A stretch of DNA of 64,000 nucleotides from the sequence record MZ475898.1, one strand, 5' to 3'. The notes under the pieces were generated by a model. It was not told the DNA's origin. It worked only from the letters and a program-made list of their open reading frames with translations, and searched no databases. Shown here piece by piece: positions 23,378-34,098 of this stretch. The position numbers and the translations under genes were made by a program. Within the stretch, counting starts at the first letter, position 1. Each line of letters starts with the position of its first letter.

Positions 23378-23762
23378 TCAGTTACGTGATCAATTGACCG
23401 AAGCTGAATACGCAGAACTTGAGCGCACGACAGCACGGTCAATCATGGAACAAGTGTGGGCACTACGCGGCTGGACGGTTAAGCTCGACTGGTGCAACTA
23501 TATGTGCGACGACGTTGATTGGTTATTCCATGGTAATGAACGTAAAGCACCAGTTGACCACGCTATGCCGAATTCTGGTGTTGGCACTAGCATTGAGCAG
23601 CATCGCCTTAATGTCGTGTTTACTCCTACTGAGGTTAGCGTTACGAACTCACTGGTAGATAGTCCTGTCACTGGTACTGGTATGTCACTGCGCTGTGCTT
23701 ACTGCGCGTGGCTTTTAGAAATCGAAAAACAAAAGGCTGCCAATGCGCTGCAATCTGACTGA
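23364..23762 (+). CDS. hypothetical protein (132 aa)
   Basis: ORF in operon; start uncertain. Confidence 0.5.
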   Translation: MSSVNQLRDQLTEAEYAELERTTARSIMEQVWALRGWTVKLDWCNYMCDDVDWLFHGNERKAPVDHAMPNSGVGTSIEQHRLNVVFTPTEVSVTNSLVDSPVTGTGMSLRCAYCAWLLEIEKQKAANALQSD

Positions 23763-24258
23763 ACTGCCTATCAAACTCGATCAGGCTGAAAACATTATGG
23801 GCAGCGTGTTTGCGCTTGCTGCTGGCTCTAAGTCCAAACGCCGTGCTACTGCTGCAATGCTCATCCATTTCCATGAAGGCTACCCTACGATCATCAGTAG
23901 TGGTGTCAATGGTACTGTGCCTGGTGAAAGCAACGTGTGTGAGAATGAAGACCTCACTCTGACGTTTGCTCACGTCACCCACGCAGAAGCTAACTGCCTC
24001 AATCGCATGGACGAATACAGTCTGTGGCCAGAAGAAGAGGACATCCTGTTTTGTACTGACAGCCCATGTCCTGATTGTTTGCAGCAACTCGAATCTGCTG
24101 GTGTGCAGACCATCGTTTATGCGCGTGAATACAGACTCACAGAGCACCTGGATAAGTCTGCTATTCGCATGTATTGTCTCGATATTGAGAACGTGAGGGC
24201 GTCTTTGCTGAAATCTGTAAATCGTATAGACGAAGTGATTGCAACCACACCTACTTAA
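23743..24258 (+). CDS. dCMP deaminase
   Basis: SSGVNGT, HAEANC, SPCPDC Zn-deaminase motifs. Confidence 0.9.
   Translation: MRCNLTELPIKLDQAENIMGSVFALAAGSKSKRRATAAMLIHFHEGYPTIISSGVNGTVPGESNVCENEDLTLTFAHVTHAEANCLNRMDEYSLWPEEEDILFCTDSPCPDCLQQLESAGVQTIVYAREYRLTEHLDKSAIRMYCLDIENVRASLLKSVNRIDEVIATTPT
24213..24222 (+). promoter_or_regulatory. ATCTGTAAAT motif
   Basis: Exact copy, 54 nt upstream of ATG 24276. Confidence 0.5.
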
Positions 24259-24275
24259 ATACCATAAGGATTGTC

Positions 24276-24956
24276 ATGATGGACAAGAATCTGACTATTG
24301 AGTTTTTTGCGCCCCGCATTGAAGGAAAGACAGTGCATGTTGGACCTAAGCCTATCGATGCACCTTCTTGGGAAGAGCAGATGGCTACTGTGTCTGGAGA
24401 GACTACCTACCAGATGCGCCAGCGTGCGTTTGACCGCATGGATAAGGAATTCAAATTCACTATTCAAGACATTGCAGATTCTTTGGACTGTCGTGACAAT
24501 CCTTCCAGTCCTACAGGTCGTATTCAAGACCCGTATCGTCCGCGTCTGCACAATATCAATCTTCGCCCTGAACAGGCCGCAGTGCTGCGTGAAGTAATGA
24601 GTCCTCCTCGCCACATGGGTGGCCTGCCTGTTGAGTTAATGCAGGGAACTGAGTCTTCTCTTAATGCCCGCGCTCTCTTTGAGCATACCAAAGAGCATTT
24701 TCGTAAGGAAGGACCTATCGTTACGATTGATAGTATCCCTGTTGAGTTCACACAGAAAGGTGATGACAGTATCGTCATTGCAGAAGATAAGATCGGTCAA
24801 CAGGCGTGGGGGCGCACGCTTCGTATCGACTATGAATCACGTTCTGACTGGTCGATGAATCGCACCAACCGAGCTGCAACGCCTGCTAAAAGCCGCAGCA
24901 AACTTCGCGCAAAGGGTCGTGCTCAAAAGCAAGCACGCAAGCGCCAAAGAGGATAA
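24276..24956 (+). CDS. hypothetical protein with basic C-terminus (226 aa)
   Basis: AAGGA RBS. Confidence 0.6.
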   Translation: MMDKNLTIEFFAPRIEGKTVHVGPKPIDAPSWEEQMATVSGETTYQMRQRAFDRMDKEFKFTIQDIADSLDCRDNPSSPTGRIQDPYRPRLHNINLRPEQAAVLREVMSPPRHMGGLPVELMQGTESSLNARALFEHTKEHFRKEGPIVTIDSIPVEFTQKGDDSIVIAEDKIGQQAWGRTLRIDYESRSDWSMNRTNRAATPAKSRSKLRAKGRAQKQARKRQRG

Positions 24957-24961
24957 CAATA

Positions 24962-25459
24962 ATGAGCGACATTAATCAATTACGCCGCAACTGGTTACAG
25001 TCTATGGACGTGCCTGAAGAGCTGGTGGACAAAGTATGCGGCACTGACATTGAACAGCAAGATCTGTTTGAGCGTCTGAGCGCACAGCAACAACGCAAAG
25101 TAACGATCGGCCTTGCGCTGCTTCATCTGCAAGTGCCTGATGAAATTCGTTTCGATTTGCTCACCAATCATCTGGACGAGACTGAGCGTTTGGTCAAAGA
25201 GCAATTCGAAGAACTGGCAGCACGTCTCGTTAATCAAGTGACGCAGACGGGTTCACCGGAGAAGCAATCAATGACAGGCGGTGTTCGTTTAGCAATGCTG
25301 ATGAACATCCTTGGCTTTGATGATACTACGCTGCACGGTATCATGTCGAACCCCAGCTTGATGCGTCAGGCGGGCCTTGTTGCTATGACTGGCCTTCAAG
25401 ATATGGGACAGAAAATACAGCAACTTTACGACGGAAATAAAAGCAATGAGCCAAAATGA
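24962..25459 (+). CDS. hypothetical protein (165 aa)
   Basis: GAGGA RBS. Confidence 0.6.
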   Translation: MSDINQLRRNWLQSMDVPEELVDKVCGTDIEQQDLFERLSAQQQRKVTIGLALLHLQVPDEIRFDLLTNHLDETERLVKEQFEELAARLVNQVTQTGSPEKQSMTGGVRLAMLMNILGFDDTTLHGIMSNPSLMRQAGLVAMTGLQDMGQKIQQLYDGNKSNEPK

Positions 25460-25583
25460 ATTAGACGATTTCGACATTCCTGATCTGGACGAAGCCGAAC
25501 AACGCGCAGAAGCTAAGCGTGATGGTGGTGGGGAAGTTGTCGAAGCATCTGATGAATGTGAAGGCGGCGCCTGCAAAATCTAA
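25446..25583 (+). CDS. 45-aa acidic peptide ending ECEGGACKI (NrdA C-terminal tail-like)
   Basis: Hand-translated, below the ORF-track cutoff: MSQNELDDFDIPDLDEAEQRAEAKRDGGGEVVEASDECEGGACKI*; fills the gap between two genes. Confidence 0.7.
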   Translation: MSQNELDDFDIPDLDEAEQRAEAKRDGGGEVVEASDECEGGACKI

Positions 25584-25627
25584 TTCATGGGGCCTCGTGC
25601 CCCATTTCTGTTTCTCGGAGAGAACCT

Positions 25628-28162: not shown

Positions 28163-29263
28163 ATGACAGGCCCTCTCGATCTCACTAACCCACAGCACTT
28201 CGAACTGTACTCGCTGCACAGCGTTGATGCACAGTATATCAATCTGTGTGACGCACTCCTCACTCAGGGTACGCACGAATCTGACCCAGATCGCACTGCC
28301 GATACGTGGCATACGCTGATCGGTATTGGCTTCCAGTTGTCTAACACCAACATCGCTTTCCCTGCGCTGCTGTCTAAGCGTGTCAACGTCCGTGCAGCTA
28401 TCGATGAATCATGCTGGTTCGCACGCGGTGAAACGAACATCGCAACTCTCGGTTCTAAAATCTGGAACGAGTGGGCAGACGAAGAAGGTGAGAACGGTCC
28501 TATCTACGGCTTCCAGTATCGCAACTGGCCTGACATTAAAGTGTTCAACACTGTCGAAGGTATGATTGAGCAGCACATCCCACCAGCAATGATTGAGCGC
28601 ATCTCGAAAGAGATCAACCGCATGAAGGCGCAGGGCTATATCGAAACTGCGTTGCCTGATGGTCGCGTGCTGTATGAAGGCTATATCGATCAGTACGCTG
28701 ATGCACTACGTCAAATCATGGCGCGTAGTCGTAGCCGCCGCATTCGTGTGCAAGCGTTCAACCCTGGTTACGTTGGTATGCAGAGCCTGCCTCCGTGTCA
28801 CACTGAGTTTGAGTTCAACGTGACCAAAGCTACTGCGTATGAAATTGCGCAGATGGAAGCACGCTCAATGCGTCCTGACGCCGACTCACTGCATATCGTG
28901 GTGACGATGCGCAGCAATGATGCACTTCTCGGGCGCCCCTTCAACATCGTTGGCTACAGCGCCATGCACCAGTTGTTTGCGAAGTGGGCGGGTCTGAACG
29001 TTGGTTCGTTTACTCTGAATGTGACCAATATGCACATGTACGATCACCACCGCGAAGCGTATGCACAACAGCGTGAGCAGTGGCTGGAACTACAGACGCA
29101 GATGCAGACGACAGGCAAACCTGTTGTTTACCCTACCCTCGAAATCACTGACGACATTCTGGGCCTGACGCCAGAAGAGCTGCTGGATAACGTCAACGTC
29201 GATTGGTTCGAGCTGGTGGACTACTCTCCTAAACCTGCTGTTAAAGGACGCGTAACCAAATGA
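28163..29263 (+). CDS. thyA: thymidylate synthase
   Basis: IWNEWAD, GPIYGFQYRNW, LPPCH, MRSNDALLGRPFN, HMYDHH. Confidence 0.93.
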   Translation: MTGPLDLTNPQHFELYSLHSVDAQYINLCDALLTQGTHESDPDRTADTWHTLIGIGFQLSNTNIAFPALLSKRVNVRAAIDESCWFARGETNIATLGSKIWNEWADEEGENGPIYGFQYRNWPDIKVFNTVEGMIEQHIPPAMIERISKEINRMKAQGYIETALPDGRVLYEGYIDQYADALRQIMARSRSRRIRVQAFNPGYVGMQSLPPCHTEFEFNVTKATAYEIAQMEARSMRPDADSLHIVVTMRSNDALLGRPFNIVGYSAMHQLFAKWAGLNVGSFTLNVTNMHMYDHHREAYAQQREQWLELQTQMQTTGKPVVYPTLEITDDILGLTPEELLDNVNVDWFELVDYSPKPAVKGRVTK

Positions 29264-31262: not shown

Positions 31263-31961
31263 ATGGCAAAAATTGCTAAAGCAAAGGAAGGGAAAAAGAA
31301 AAGCAACCCTATGTTGATTGACCTGAAAAAGTTCAAGTCAGTTAAACAGCTTAAGGGTGCGAAGTACAACCCTCGTTTCATTACAGACAGCCGACTGAGA
31401 GCGCTCGAAGGTTCTTTGGGCAGCTTCGGTGATTTGTCTGGCGTGGTGTTCAACAACAGCGTAGACAGTGGCGTATTGATCTCAGGCCACCAGCGTCTCA
31501 AGTCGATTGAGAAGTGGGACTCGCGCATTGAGATTCAACAAACGTCTGACAAGTACGGCACGGTAGCGTTGGGTTATATCCATGCTACCAGCGCCAAAGG
31601 TAAAACGATCAGCATCCCACTGCGTATCGTTAACTGGTCAGATAAGAAAGTGGAGTTTGCTGCTAACATTGCTGCGAATGCCCACGGCGGTGAGTTCGAT
31701 AACAAAAAGCTCGCGTCTCTTGTTGAGAAGCTGGACCTGACTACAATCAAGCCAGCTCTTATCGGGCTTGACCCGTTAGAGATTCGCGGCCTGCAACAGA
31801 CGCTGAGCAAACAAGCTATCGTCGAGCAGGAAAAGCGTGTTGGTAAAACAACAGGCAAAATGAACGGCAGTACTGGCGAGTTCAAAGAGTACACGACTGA
31901 TGAAGTTGGTACTGCGCTGACCTGCACCTGCCCACGTTGTGGCTTTAAGTTCGAGGGATAA
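31263..31961 (+). CDS. ParB/Srx-like N-terminal domain protein with C-terminal Zn-ribbon
   Basis: YNPRFIT, SLGSFG, ISGHQRL, ANIAAN..GGEFD, CTCPRCGFKF. Confidence 0.85.
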   Translation: MAKIAKAKEGKKKSNPMLIDLKKFKSVKQLKGAKYNPRFITDSRLRALEGSLGSFGDLSGVVFNNSVDSGVLISGHQRLKSIEKWDSRIEIQQTSDKYGTVALGYIHATSAKGKTISIPLRIVNWSDKKVEFAANIAANAHGGEFDNKKLASLVEKLDLTTIKPALIGLDPLEIRGLQQTLSKQAIVEQEKRVGKTTGKMNGSTGEFKEYTTDEVGTALTCTCPRCGFKFEG

Positions 31962-31962
31962 C

Positions 31963-34098
31963 ATGATCATCAAGCCGCCTACAATGAAAGAGATTAATAA
32001 GCTGCCCAAGCCTTGGTCAGGTATGAGTTTCTTTGCAGGTTGCGGTGGTTCATCTACCGGTCACAAGATGGCCGGTATTAACATCCTACTGAGCAACGAG
32101 TTCGTGGACGCGGCTCGTGAATCGTATGAAGCGAACCATCCAACAACCAAAGTGTTGCCCCACGATATTCGTCGTCTTGACCCGAAAAAGCTGCTTAGCT
32201 ATTGCGGCCTGAGTCAGGGCGAACTGGACTTGCTCGACGGCAGTCCTCCGTGCTTCACCGAAGACACGTTCATTCATACCGACACTGGTATGAAGTTCAT
32301 CACTGATATGCGCATCGGTGACTTCGCTATGACCTCTGTTGGTAAGTATCATCCAGTGTATGACACGATGGTACGTCCGTATGACGGTCAGATGCACAGA
32401 ATTGAAACGCTGCTTGGTCAGAACAATGCAACGCCTGAACATCCGTTCTTTGTTCGTCGTCAGAATGAAGAAACTGGCGGGTACAGTGCGCCGTTCTGGT
32501 GTGACGCTAAAGATGTGCAGGAAGGTGACCTGTTAGGTACGCCTCGTGTTACGCCTGATATGGGCGAAGCACACACGCATGAGATTATCTCGTCGTTGAC
32601 TGCGCAGCTTGTGCGTTGGATTGCATTGCCTGAGTTCTGGTGGCTGATTGGTCACTGGTGCAATCGCGGTGCAATCGATAAGATTCGTGGTGTCGATGTT
32701 ATTCAATTCACCTCGATGACAGCGATGGAAAACTCGCTGGTGGAACAAGCGTTCGACGTGCTCAAGTTAAGCAGCATCAACAGCGCTTCGTCCGACATGG
32801 GCGTTCATCGTAAGACCGTTCGTGTTGTTATGGACACAGACCTGTTGCTGTTCTTGCGTATGTTTATCGCGCAGGGCAAGAAGTCTATGTCCCGCCGTCT
32901 GCCTGGCATGATCTTCCATCTGGCTAAAGAGCTGAAACAGCAATTCATTCTCGGCTATCTGGGTCGTGATTACGTCACAGCAATGGGCGTTGGTCATGCG
33001 TTAGAGGCTGACTCAAAGCGCTTCCTAGTTGAGATGAATTACCTGTGCTGCTCTGCGTTCAACAGACCGCTGTTCGATGCAATGTTGTTCACTGACTTGC
33101 ATTACGGTAGTCCGATGTTACCACCGAGTCGCTTCATTACCAAAGAGCACATCGGCTTCCTGTTCTTGCAAGAAGAGGTTAATTTCTTCTTTGAGTTCGA
33201 GCCGGAAGACCCGCATCTGTGGGTTGAAGTGATTGAGAACTTTACGCATCATGAAACGTGCAACGTCTATAACTTCTCAGTCAGTGTTGATGAGACGTAT
33301 GTTGCTAACGGCATGGTCGTGCATAACTGCAAAGGGTTCTCGACTGCTGGCGTGAAAGAAGACGGCTGGGGCAAAGAGGTTAAGTACAGCGGCAACAAGT
33401 ATCAGCAAGTCGATGACCTGTTCGATCAGTATTGCCGTATGCTCAAGCACATGCAGCCTAAAACGTTCACTGCGGAAAACGTTAGTGGCCTCGTTAAAGG
33501 TGCGTCGAAGGGTTACTTCATTGAAATCATGAAGACCTTTGATCAGCTGGGCTACTATGTGCGAGCGCCGTTGCTTAATGCTGCGTGGCTTGGTGTGCCT
33601 CAGTCTCGTGAGCGTATCATCTTTATGGGTGTGCGCAAAGACGTGGCGAAAGCACTCGGCTATAAAACTGCGTTGACTGCTGTGCCTGATGTAACACCTC
33701 AATCAAGCATGGCGTTCCTTGCAGATGCATTGCCGAACATTCGTCGCTATAAAGGTACGGAGCGTGACATTATCAAGTATCTGCCTGCTGTTAACGGCCC
33801 GATGCCTACGATTACCGCTGCTGATGCTATCGCATACGAAACAGCACGCTTCTCCTCTGCTGGCTTCATTGAAGACGACAAAGGGCACAGACGCAAGCTG
33901 ACGATTGACGAACTCAAAGTTGTGTCAGGCATGCCTAGTGATTACGTGCTCACAGGTAAGTTTGAAGAACAATGGGAACGTCTCGGTCGTGTGTGCGTAC
34001 CTGCAATGACGTGTGCTGCGGCAAGCGCGTTGATACGCCATGTGCTTGAGCCTTACGCAAAGCTGCGTAAAAAGAAACCTGGGGATCGTTTTCGTTAA
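31963..34098 (+). CDS. C5-cytosine methyltransferase homolog with intein; predicted carboxymethyltransferase (CmoX-like)
   Basis: Motif I FFAGCGG, IV DGSPP|CKGFS, VI AENVSGL, VIII PQSRER; motif X reads ERLGRVCVP (Arg where Asn is normal). Confidence 0.88.
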   Translation: MIIKPPTMKEINKLPKPWSGMSFFAGCGGSSTGHKMAGINILLSNEFVDAARESYEANHPTTKVLPHDIRRLDPKKLLSYCGLSQGELDLLDGSPPCFTEDTFIHTDTGMKFITDMRIGDFAMTSVGKYHPVYDTMVRPYDGQMHRIETLLGQNNATPEHPFFVRRQNEETGGYSAPFWCDAKDVQEGDLLGTPRVTPDMGEAHTHEIISSLTAQLVRWIALPEFWWLIGHWCNRGAIDKIRGVDVIQFTSMTAMENSLVEQAFDVLKLSSINSASSDMGVHRKTVRVVMDTDLLLFLRMFIAQGKKSMSRRLPGMIFHLAKELKQQFILGYLGRDYVTAMGVGHALEADSKRFLVEMNYLCCSAFNRPLFDAMLFTDLHYGSPMLPPSRFITKEHIGFLFLQEEVNFFFEFEPEDPHLWVEVIENFTHHETCNVYNFSVSVDETYVANGMVVHNCKGFSTAGVKEDGWGKEVKYSGNKYQQVDDLFDQYCRMLKHMQPKTFTAENVSGLVKGASKGYFIEIMKTFDQLGYYVRAPLLNAAWLGVPQSRERIIFMGVRKDVAKALGYKTALTAVPDVTPQSSMAFLADALPNIRRYKGTERDIIKYLPAVNGPMPTITAADAIAYETARFSSAGFIEDDKGHRRKLTIDELKVVSGMPSDYVLTGKFEEQWERLGRVCVPAMTCAAASALIRHVLEPYAKLRKKKPGDRFR
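32251..33327 (+). mobile_element. intein (359 aa) with degenerate LAGLIDADG endonuclease
   Basis: Starts CFTEDT, block B ATPEHPF, ends VYNFSV...YVANGMVVHN, followed by Cys(+1), the catalytic Cys. Confidence 0.92.

What the first reader, a model, noticed from the sequence alone, without database searches (positions are those of the whole stretch)
25446..25583. Free-standing 45-aa peptide that ends like the redox tail of ribonucleotide reductase NrdA
Seen: an ORF missed by the track, acidic and likely disordered, ending DECEGGACKI. Known: E. coli NrdA ends GCESGACKI, whose two Cys shuttle electrons from thioredoxin/glutaredoxin to the active site. It lies in the nucleotide-metabolism region between dCMP deaminase and thyA. 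Inference: a trans-acting RNR tail that boosts or redirects dNTP synthesis, a separately encoded tail for a tail-less phage NrdA, or a decoy for Trx/Grx.
Basis: partly seen in the sequence, partly recalled or inferred. Interest (0 to 1): 0.75.

Follow-up and report, generated by a model that had tools for sequence, protein, structure and literature searches.

The report
Free-standing ribonucleotide-reductase tail peptide in phage
A jumbo Erwinia phage with no ribonucleotide reductase of its own encodes a conserved 45-residue acidic peptide whose end copies the cysteine-bearing redox tail of the bacterial enzyme's large subunit, and this uncharacterised peptide family is widespread in large phages and also sits in Neisseria chromosomes.

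Summary
The ORF is real (25446..25583, +, 45 aa) and the likeness to the NrdA tail is specific. Its last 21 residues, from an R-D-G hinge to the final CEGGACKI, match complete C-terminal tails of class Ia NrdA in E. coli, Tatumella, Yersinia, Proteus and marine phages. Pattern scans for the terminal octapeptide plus stop codon returned only NrdA ends or members of this peptide family.

- GenBank already annotates the ORF, as hypothetical.
- The phage (Erwinia phage pEa_SNUABM_25) has no NrdA, no NrdB, no other RNR class, and no Trx/Grx-like motif. "Tail for a tail-less phage NrdA" therefore fails.

The peptide belongs to an uncharacterised family (phrog_10239; no Pfam or NCBIfam model). It has two modules: an N-terminal acidic/hydrophobic motif and the NrdA-type tail. 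Members occur in about 80 jumbo-phage records and 55 clusters among 1.84 billion proteins. Some are fused to unrelated domains. One sits between iscS and iscU in Neisseria.

Best reading (inferred): a trans-acting dithiol tail that plugs into the host NrdA and Grx/Trx relay, more likely supporting than blocking it. Direction and target are untested.

The parts
25446..25583 (+). 45-aa peptide gene (GenBank pEaSNUABM25_00040), stop codon included
   Evidence: Homologues found by tblastn in about 80 phage records. Matches phrog_10239 at E 5e-5. 55 clusters at E<=1e-3 among 1.84 billion representatives.
25455..25493 (+). N-terminal acidic/hydrophobic motif (about residues 4-16), alternating Asp and hydrophobic residues
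   Evidence: Aligned across 24 free-standing members. Resembles NrdB C-terminal octapeptides: p=0.014 for this peptide, p<=0.0008 in marine and FBKp24-like members, not significant in other lineages.
25518..25580 (+). NrdA-type flexible tail (residues 25-45), from the R-D-G hinge to the terminal K-I
   Evidence: tblastn matches to the extreme C-termini of phage NrdA. Compared with about 100 bacterial NrdA tails, whose median length after the hinge is 27 residues. The family profile's best PDB hits are E. coli NrdA 751-761, aligned end to end.
25557..25574 (+). Cys38-x4-Cys43 pair (TGT 25557-25559, TGC 25572-25574)
   Evidence: Both Cys are invariant in alignments A1 (10 of 10) and A2 (8 of 8). 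Same spacing and position as the NrdA pair. Codon changes in the tail across lineages include many synonymous ones.
25587..25615 (+). Terminator-like hairpin (7-bp stem, 5 G-C pairs) followed by a T-rich run
   Evidence: Terminators are annotated right after the homologues in Klebsiella phage Miami and Yersinia phage phiR1-37.
24962..25459 (+). Upstream 165-aa ORF that overlaps the peptide start by 14 nt (probable translational coupling); function unknown
   Evidence: Homologues only in Snuvirus- and Alexandravirus-type phages. No Pfam, PHROG or NCBIfam family. Not related to the genes upstream of the peptide in Miami, PCH45 or FBKp24, nor to the fused N-domains.
23743..24258 (+). dCMP deaminase, the first recognisable gene of the same-strand run that ends at the terminator
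   Evidence: Pfam dCMP_cyt_deam_1, E 1.1e-9. RefSeq names it dCMP deaminase in the 96%-identical phage SNUABM_7.
28163..29263 (+). Thymidylate synthase homologue (366 aa), nucleotide-metabolism context
   Evidence: Pfam Thymidylat_synt, E 2e-56.

Best explanation
The gene makes a small, very acidic, probably unstructured peptide. It is a free-standing copy of the flexible C-terminal redox tail of host-type class Ia NrdA, preceded by a short acidic/hydrophobic docking motif. The phage has no RNR and no recognisable thioredoxin or glutaredoxin. The proposal is that the peptide is reduced by host Grx1/Trx, as NrdA's own tail is. It then exchanges its dithiol/disulfide with the active-site cysteine pair of host NrdA in trans. 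This would add reducing capacity to the host enzyme that must supply dNDPs for a 263-kb genome. Shown: the gene, its conservation, the tail identity, the absence of phage RNR, and the family's distribution. Inferred: translation, reduction by Grx/Trx, contact with NrdA, and the sign of the effect.
For: 1. The tail is a complete NrdA tail in register with both ends. From R-D-G to K-I it spans 21 residues, against 20-45 in about 100 NrdA proteins.
2. The terminal octapeptide plus stop occurs only in NrdA or in this family. In IMG/VR: 15 NrdA loci versus 34 family loci. In genomes: about 100 NrdA versus 14 free peptides.
3. The family profile's top PDB hits are NrdA C-termini. For the Neisseria member the top hit is 1qfn_B, a free 25-mer NrdA tail peptide. 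1QFN is cited among E. coli glutaredoxin structures in PMC10897161. That it is the Grx1 mixed-disulfide complex is my own knowledge.
4. There is no NrdA, NrdB or other RNR in the phage, and no CGPC, CPYC or CxQC motif in any ORF of 60-260 aa.
5. Protein-level selection is evident: both Cys are invariant, and tail codons differ synonymously between lineages.
6. The peptide-bearing phage PCH45 carries an nrdB 80% identical to E. coli NrdB but no nrdA. That phage must therefore work through host NrdA.
7. Genes for the family sit beside nucleotide-metabolism or replication genes in unrelated phages: dCMP deaminase and ThyA here; ThyA, dCTP deaminase and endonuclease I in marine phiKZ-like contigs; ThyX, PolA, primase-helicase and 5'-3' exonuclease elsewhere.
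8. That the large subunit's C-terminal cysteine pair mediates between the active site and Trx/Grx is established (PMC6382339, citing Zhang et al. 2007).
Against: - There is no expression or binding data for this phage.
- In phiR1-37 the homologue g117 is almost untranscribed: 3.9, 1.5 and 1.2, against 34,486 for g118 (Table S2 of PMC4848604).
- A free peptide would have to compete with NrdA's own tethered tail, so a boost is not obviously efficient. The same chemistry could equally make it a competitor.
- Neisseria keeps a tail on its own NrdA (7MDI) yet has the peptide inside the isc operon. Other bacterial members sit next to flavin reductases or an aldehyde dehydrogenase. The module is also fused to unrelated domains. 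All of this points to clients other than RNR.
- Peptide tails do not track host NrdA tails strictly. phiR1-37 and PCH45 differ from the Yersinia and Serratia-type tails seen.
- The host's own (Erwinia amylovora) NrdA tail was not retrieved.
Confidence: 0.35

Rival explanations
1. Decoy or inhibitor. The peptide competes with NrdA's own tail for Grx1/Trx or for the active-site channel. Where the N-terminal motif looks like the NrdB tail, it also competes for the beta-tail cleft on NrdA. The result would be to damp host RNR, in the manner of yeast Sml1 or of R2 C-terminal peptide inhibitors.
For: It rests on the same tail identity as the best explanation. In marine and FBKp24-like members the N-terminal motif cannot be told apart from NrdB C-terminal octapeptides (p<=0.0008). 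For the window peptide the match is marginal (p=0.014). Sml1 is a small inhibitor of the large subunit (PMC6382339). dCMP deaminase and ThyA beside the gene would fit a phage that recycles host dNMPs.
Against: The phage has no RNR of its own to spare from inhibition. PCH45 adds a host-compatible NrdB, which argues for use of host RNR rather than shutdown. In NrdB the binding motif is at a free C-terminus, whereas here it is N-terminal or internal. The NrdB-likeness is absent in Alexandravirus, Miami and Neisseria members.
Confidence: 0.2
2. General portable dithiol handle. The tail is a Trx/Grx-recognised shuttle that can be attached to, or work beside, different client proteins: Fe-S assembly in Neisseria, and unknown phage proteins. 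RNR would be only the place where it was first seen.
For: The Neisseria member lies between iscS and iscU in every species seen. Moraxella and Thalassolituus members follow an OYE-type and a CysJ-like flavin reductase. The whole two-module unit ends proteins with at least four unrelated N-domains: N4 gp49-like, families A3 and A4, and the 123-aa and 263-aa proteins. The genes upstream of the peptide differ between phage lineages.
Against: No client has been identified. In phages the neighbours are mostly nucleotide-metabolism or replication genes. The tail is conserved to the last residue exactly as in NrdA, which suggests the same partners as NrdA.
Confidence: 0.2
3. Metal-binding or other role. 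An acidic peptide with two Cys might bind iron or zinc, for example in diiron-cofactor or Fe-S supply. The likeness to the NrdA tail would then reflect ancestry rather than shared function.
For: The isc-operon position in Neisseria. The high Asp/Glu content. The co-occurrence with nrdB only in PCH45.
Against: Two Cys and carboxylates make a poor defined metal site. The K-I terminus and the hinge are conserved exactly as in NrdA. No metal-related neighbours were seen in phages.
Confidence: 0.1
4. Separately encoded tail for a tail-less NrdA of the phage (a split gene).
For: The tail likeness alone.
Against: There is no NrdA anywhere in the 263,017-bp genome. PCH45 also lacks nrdA. Every peptide-bearing phage record shows a single tail-like place.
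Confidence: 0.01
5. Non-functional remnant of an nrdA 3' end, a chance ORF, or a RiPP precursor.
For: Its small size. The very low transcription of the phiR1-37 homologue. One automatic UniRef label, 'FxLD family lantipeptide', on a Neisseria member.
Against: 55 diverged clusters with invariant Cys and synonymous change. It has its own terminator and is coupled to the upstream ORF. No maturase-like neighbour was found in any context examined. There is no DNA similarity to E. coli nrdA.
Confidence: 0.05

Closest known systems
C-terminal redox tail of class Ia ribonucleotide reductase alpha subunit (NrdA; E. coli Cys754/Cys759)
   Same: It has the same terminal sequence, differing from E. coli at one of the last eight residues and identical to Tatumella, Yersinia, Pectobacterium and Proteus. 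It also has the same Cys-x4-Cys spacing, the same acidic run before the first Cys, the same R-D-G hinge, and a length within the NrdA range.
   Different: It is not attached to any RNR catalytic domain. It is encoded alone, in a genome without RNR, and carries an extra N-terminal motif.
The 25-residue NrdA tail peptide of PDB 1QFN (complex with E. coli glutaredoxin 1, by my own knowledge of the entry)
   Same: Both are free peptides carrying this tail. 1qfn_B is the top PDB hit of the Neisseria family member, and the window peptide's family profile hits the same NrdA residues.
   Different: 1QFN is a laboratory fragment, whereas this is a natural gene product. No interaction has been shown for it.
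Sml1 / Spd1-type small regulators of the RNR large subunit (yeasts)
   Same: Both are small proteins proposed to act on the large subunit at the step where its C-terminal cysteine pair regenerates the active site (PMC6382339).
   Different: There is no sequence relationship (no Pfam hit). Those regulators are inhibitors without the cysteine tail, whereas here the tail itself is copied.
C-terminal tail of NrdB (the alpha-binding peptide) and R2-derived peptide inhibitors
   Same: In some family members the N-terminal motif equals NrdB terminal heptapeptides of other organisms.
   Different: The match is marginal in the window peptide (p=0.014). The motif is not at a free C-terminus, and it is absent in several lineages.
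Glutaredoxin domain fused to NrdB (Rozman Grinberg et al. 2018, cited in PMC10897161)
   Same: It is another natural rearrangement of the RNR reduction relay into a new polypeptide context.
   Different: That case moves the reductant onto the enzyme. This one detaches the enzyme's own shuttle.

Membership tests
Class Ia RNR alpha subunit (NrdA) | Catalytic ten-stranded barrel (Pfam Ribonuc_red_lgC/lgN), with or without an ATP-cone | tested here: not met
   The 45-aa product has no Pfam hit. No NrdA-like sequence lies elsewhere in the genome.
Class Ia RNR alpha subunit (NrdA) | Flexible C-terminal tail with Cys-x4-Cys at the extreme end | tested here: met
Class Ia RNR alpha subunit (NrdA) | Partner nrdB gene adjacent or in the genome | tested here: not met
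   No NrdB by tblastn in the whole genome.
phrog_10239 / free-standing two-module tail peptides (uncharacterised) | Match to the PHROG profile | tested here: met
   E 5.2e-5 over residues 5-45. phrog_14561 is weaker.
phrog_10239 / free-standing two-module tail peptides (uncharacterised) | N-terminal Asp/hydrophobic motif plus terminal Cys-x4-Cys-K-I in one short product | tested here: met
   Alignments. Profile search returned 55 clusters.
Sml1/Spd1-type RNR regulators | Sequence homology to the family | tested here: not met
   No Pfam family at E<=0.01. No PDB hit other than NrdA tails.
Sml1/Spd1-type RNR regulators | Binds the large subunit and interferes with its C-terminal tail | not testable with these tools
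NrdB C-terminal alpha-binding peptide mimic | Match to the terminal octapeptide profile of NrdB | tested here: inconclusive
   Position-specific score against 5000 shuffles: window peptide p=0.014; four other members p<=0.0008; most others not significant.
NrdB C-terminal alpha-binding peptide mimic | Motif lies at the free C-terminus | tested here: not met
   The motif occupies about residues 4-16 of 45.
RiPP precursor peptide | Adjacent maturase (radical SAM, lanthionine synthetase, YcaO or similar) | tested here: not met
   Neighbours here and in eight other contexts carry no such family.
Thioredoxin/glutaredoxin substrate of the NrdA-tail type | Sequence equivalent to the tail segment that pairs with glutaredoxin in 1QFN | tested here: met
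   1qfn_B is the top PDB hit of the Neisseria member. The family profile aligns to the same NrdA residues.
Thioredoxin/glutaredoxin substrate of the NrdA-tail type | Is actually reduced by Trx/Grx | not testable with these tools
   Requires measurement.

The most novel reading that the evidence does not exclude
A previously unrecognised class of RNR accessory microprotein. It would be a portable 'double-tail' module, with an NrdB-tail-like anchor and an NrdA-type dithiol tail. Jumbo phages without RNR, and Neisseria from within its isc operon, would use it to feed or gate the class Ia RNR redox cycle in trans.
Probability: 0.3. Interest if true: 0.85.

Novelty: new variant of a known kind. Interest (0 to 1): 0.72.

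Why it matters
The C-terminal cysteine tail of RNR is textbook chemistry, but it is known only as part of the enzyme. A natural, conserved, separately encoded tail would be a new way to tune dNTP supply, whether by a virus that owns no RNR or by a bacterium. The family is found in about 80 phage genomes and in marine phiKZ-like phages. Its Neisseria member is listed in 10,931 blocks of the sequence collection, each holding at least one contig that carries it.

The family gives a concrete, small, synthesisable object for studying how the tail is recognised by Grx/Trx and by the active site. The Neisseria member matters because class Ia RNR is being pursued as a gonorrhoea drug target (PMC8865847). 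It also flags a 42-50-aa gene family that Pfam and NCBIfam do not cover.

Tried and rejected
- Split-tail hypothesis: rejected, because there is no NrdA or NrdB in the genome.
- Recent capture from host nrdA: no DNA similarity to any of 5,426 E. coli genomes.
- RNA element explaining the 91% nucleotide identity of the last 66 nt with Klebsiella phage Miami: no Rfam match. Other lineages show many synonymous changes, so the constraint is on the protein.
- Conserved operon partner: the upstream 165-aa ORF is shared only with Alexandravirus-type phages. It is unrelated to the upstream genes in Miami, PCH45 and FBKp24, and to the fused N-domains, by BLAST and profile-profile comparison.
- Named families: no Pfam or NCBIfam hit; the PHROG hits have unknown function.
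- Literature: searches for the terminal motif strings returned nothing. Searches on jumbo phages and RNR tails found no description of such a peptide.
- Phage-encoded reductant: no Trx, Grx or NrdH active-site motif.
- Host/peptide tail covariation: not resolved.
- Skurnik 2012 and Zhang 2007 are not held in the library.
- RNR content was checked in full only for this phage and PCH45. Miami, FBKp24, phiR1-37 and Alexandra were not fetched whole.

Full report
**What the window is.** Megablast places the window at positions 1-64000 of Erwinia phage pEa_SNUABM_25 (MZ475898.1). This is a 263,017-bp jumbo phage of Erwinia amylovora, 100% identical over the query. Close relatives share 95-98% identity.

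**The ORF.**
- The ORF runs 25446..25583 on the + strand and encodes 45 aa.
- GenBank already annotates it as a hypothetical protein, so it was not missed by annotation.
- Its ATG lies 14 nt inside the end of a 165-aa ORF (24962..25459).
- A 7-bp G+C-rich hairpin followed by a T-rich run comes four bases after its stop.
- The same-strand run starts with a dCMP deaminase. A thymidylate synthase homologue lies 2.6 kb downstream.
- The product has 15 acidic and 4 basic residues, with a calculated charge near -11.5.

**Is the likeness to NrdA real?** Yes, and it now rests on tool-derived sequences.
- tblastn with the peptide against 50,697 phage records returned two kinds of hit: homologous small ORFs, and the extreme C-termini of annotated NrdA genes of Colwellia phage 9A and two Pseudoalteromonas phages.
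- E. coli NrdA, fetched through a DNA search, ends DDGCESGACKI. The peptide ends SDECEGGACKI.
- Many Enterobacterales and marine gammaproteobacteria have NrdA ending in exactly CEGGACKI. These include Tatumella (Erwiniaceae), Pectobacterium, Brenneria, Yersinia, Proteus and Morganella.
- The match is longer than the motif. The peptide's last 21 residues begin with the R-D-G that ends the folded part of NrdA, then run through an acidic stretch to the cysteines. NrdA tails measured the same way are 20-45 residues long, with a median of 27.
- A profile of the peptide family searched against all PDB sequences puts E. coli NrdA residues 751-761 first, aligned end to end, and also finds N. gonorrhoeae NrdA (7MDI) residues 763-773. 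The E-values (0.26-5.6) are weak, as expected for 11 residues.

**Specificity of the motif.**
- An IMG/VR scan for the terminal octapeptide (S or G at the third position) plus a stop codon gave 49 loci.
  - 15 are NrdA genes, verified by BLAST, most with nrdB alongside.
  - 29 are ORFs of 40-86 aa.
  - 5 encode proteins of 123-263 aa ending in the same module.
  - About 100 are NrdA ends.
  - 14 are free-standing small ORFs.
- No unrelated protein carries the motif.

**Is it a real gene?**
- Homologues occur in about 80 phage records: Snuvirus, Alexandravirus, Dickeya AD1 and JA phages, Klebsiella Miami and FBKp24, Serratia PCH45, Yersinia phiR1-37 and others.
- A profile search of 1.84 billion cluster representatives found 55 clusters at E<=1e-3, 11 of them at E<=1e-10. 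None is of NrdA length.
- Both cysteines are invariant: 10 of 10 in A1 and 8 of 8 in A2.
- In the last 15 codons, PCH45, phiR1-37 and FBKp24 differ from the window at 6-7 codons synonymously. This indicates selection on the protein.
- No Rfam family matches the region.
- Against strong expression everywhere: published RNA-seq values for phiR1-37 g117 are 3.9, 1.5 and 1.2, while the next gene has 34,486.

**Anatomy of the family.** Free-standing members share two modules.
- Near the N-terminus is a short run of alternating Asp and hydrophobic residues.
- After a variable linker of about 15-25 residues comes the NrdA-type tail.
- I scored the N-terminal parts against a position-specific matrix built from 45 distinct NrdB terminal octapeptides taken from fetched loci, and compared each with 5000 shuffles of itself.
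  - Marine phiKZ-like and FBKp24-like members score p<=0.0008. Some are letter-for-letter NrdB endings of other organisms.
  - The window peptide scores p=0.014.
  - Alexandravirus, Miami, phiR1-37 and Neisseria members are not significant.
- The NrdB-tail likeness is therefore a lead, not a finding, for this window.

**Does the phage have an RNR?** No.
- I fetched the rest of the genome and ran tblastn with two NrdA and two NrdB proteins. No RNR gene was found, and the best NrdA hit in the whole genome is the peptide.
- Pfam on all 34 ORFs of at least 470 aa found PolA, NAD ligase, DnaB, GyrB/GyrA-like, RecA-like, SNF2 and structural proteins, but no RNR family of any class.
- No ORF of 60-260 aa carries a Trx, Grx or NrdH active-site motif. 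This is a crude test.
- The split-gene reading fails, and any partner must be a host protein.

**PCH45.** The whole genome of the peptide-bearing phage PCH45 has an nrdB 80% identical to E. coli NrdB but no nrdA. That phage evidently works through host NrdA. This is the main reason I rank 'supports host RNR' above 'blocks host RNR'.

**Context elsewhere.**
- In marine phiKZ-like contigs of 186-192 kb, the gene lies between head genes and a cluster containing endonuclease I, thymidylate synthase and dCTP deaminase.
- In other viral contigs it sits next to 5'-3' exonuclease, ThyX, PolA or primase-helicase.
- The upstream 165-aa ORF is conserved only with Alexandravirus-type phages. It is unrelated to the upstream genes in other lineages and to the N-domains of the fused forms.
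- The module is fused to an N4 gp49/Sf6 gp66-like domain and to two unknown domain families.

**Bacterial members.**
- Neisseria species carry a 42-aa member, always in the order IscR, IscS, peptide, IscU, IscA, HscB.
- That member is listed in 10,931 blocks of the collection, each holding at least one contig that carries it, and is named only 'hypothetical'.
- Neisseria NrdA has its own tail, so the peptide is an addition and not a split.
- Other bacterial members follow an OYE-type flavin oxidoreductase, a CysJ-like diflavin reductase, or an aldehyde dehydrogenase.
- These contexts are redox-related but not RNR genes. They are the main evidence for a broader 'portable dithiol handle' reading.

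**Mechanism.** The established background is that the C-terminal cysteine pair of the large subunit carries reducing equivalents from Trx/Grx to the active-site pair (PMC6382339, citing Kolberg 2004 and Zhang 2007). A free 25-mer of the E. coli tail is in the PDB (1qfn_B).
- Inferred: the phage peptide is recognised by the same partners.
- My ranking:
  - trans-acting shuttle that supports host NrdA, 0.35
  - decoy or inhibitor, 0.2
  - general handle for other clients, 0.2
  - metal-related or other role, 0.1
  - remnant, chance ORF or RiPP precursor, 0.05
  - split tail, 0.01
- The remainder is left unassigned.

**Novelty.** No Pfam or NCBIfam model covers the family, the PHROG is of unknown function, and no paper in the library quotes the motif or describes such a peptide. 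I class it as a new variant of a known kind: the RNR redox tail, detached and portable.

**Limits.**
- The host's own NrdA tail was not retrieved.
- Only two peptide-bearing phage genomes were checked in full for RNR.
- Nothing here measures translation, binding or activity.

Noticed in passing
L192-L196 (Serratia phage PCH45, NC_091964.1); nrdB at L194:24783-25886: This peptide-bearing chimallivirus-type phage encodes an NrdB 80% identical to E. coli NrdB but has no nrdA. Similar host-like nrdB genes occur in many jumbo phages (Ea35-70, RAY, OBP, pEt-SU, AH04/AH06) and in 52-kb GJ1-like phages.
   Followed up: partly
L201:6001-6129 (Neisseria chromosome); also L074, L102, L112, L131, L139, L144: A 42-aa family member lies between iscS and iscU in many Neisseria species, although N. 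gonorrhoeae NrdA (7MDI) keeps its own tail. It is annotated only as hypothetical.
   Followed up: partly
L148:375-527 (-), L140:1759-1998 (+), L106:1493-1753 (-): Other bacterial members sit directly downstream of an OYE-type NADH:flavin oxidoreductase (Moraxella caprae), a CysJ-like diflavin reductase (Thalassolituus) and an aldehyde dehydrogenase (a Neisseria MAG).
   Followed up: partly
L068:1196-1585; L037:1055-1843; L054:5790-6158; P0038-P0052: The whole two-module unit also forms the C-terminus of larger proteins. These include an N4 gp49/Sf6 gp66-like protein, a 263-aa protein, a 123-aa protein, and two unknown N-domain families of 160-300 aa.
   Followed up: partly
window 31939-34098 (+): A 719-aa ORF combines a C-5 cytosine DNA methylase with Hint/intein-splicing domains. 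It is probably an intein-containing methylase.
   Followed up: no
window 28163-29263 (+): The thymidylate synthase homologue is 366 aa, against a 266-position Pfam model that it matches over residues 24-364. It therefore carries roughly 75 extra residues.
   Followed up: no
window 24276-24956 (+): A 226-aa ORF between the dCMP deaminase and the 165-aa ORF has no family hit and a strongly basic C-terminal end.
   Followed up: no
L005:5956-6111 (Yersinia phage phiR1-37 g117): The homologue stands alone behind a predicted sigma-70 promoter and is nearly silent in published RNA-seq: 3.9, 1.5 and 1.2, against 34,486 for g118.
   Followed up: yes
window 25518-25583 vs L002:5001-5066 (Klebsiella phage Miami): The last 66 nt are about 91% identical between otherwise unalignable Erwinia and Klebsiella/Stenotrophomonas/Raoultella phages. 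In the last 15 codons plus the stop codon there are only 4 differences, all synonymous. This suggests a closer history of this small gene than of its surroundings.
   Followed up: partly
P0054 (89 aa, metagenomic): One database protein joins an IscU-like N-terminal stretch to the Neisseria-type peptide. It may be a gene-call or assembly artefact.
   Followed up: no
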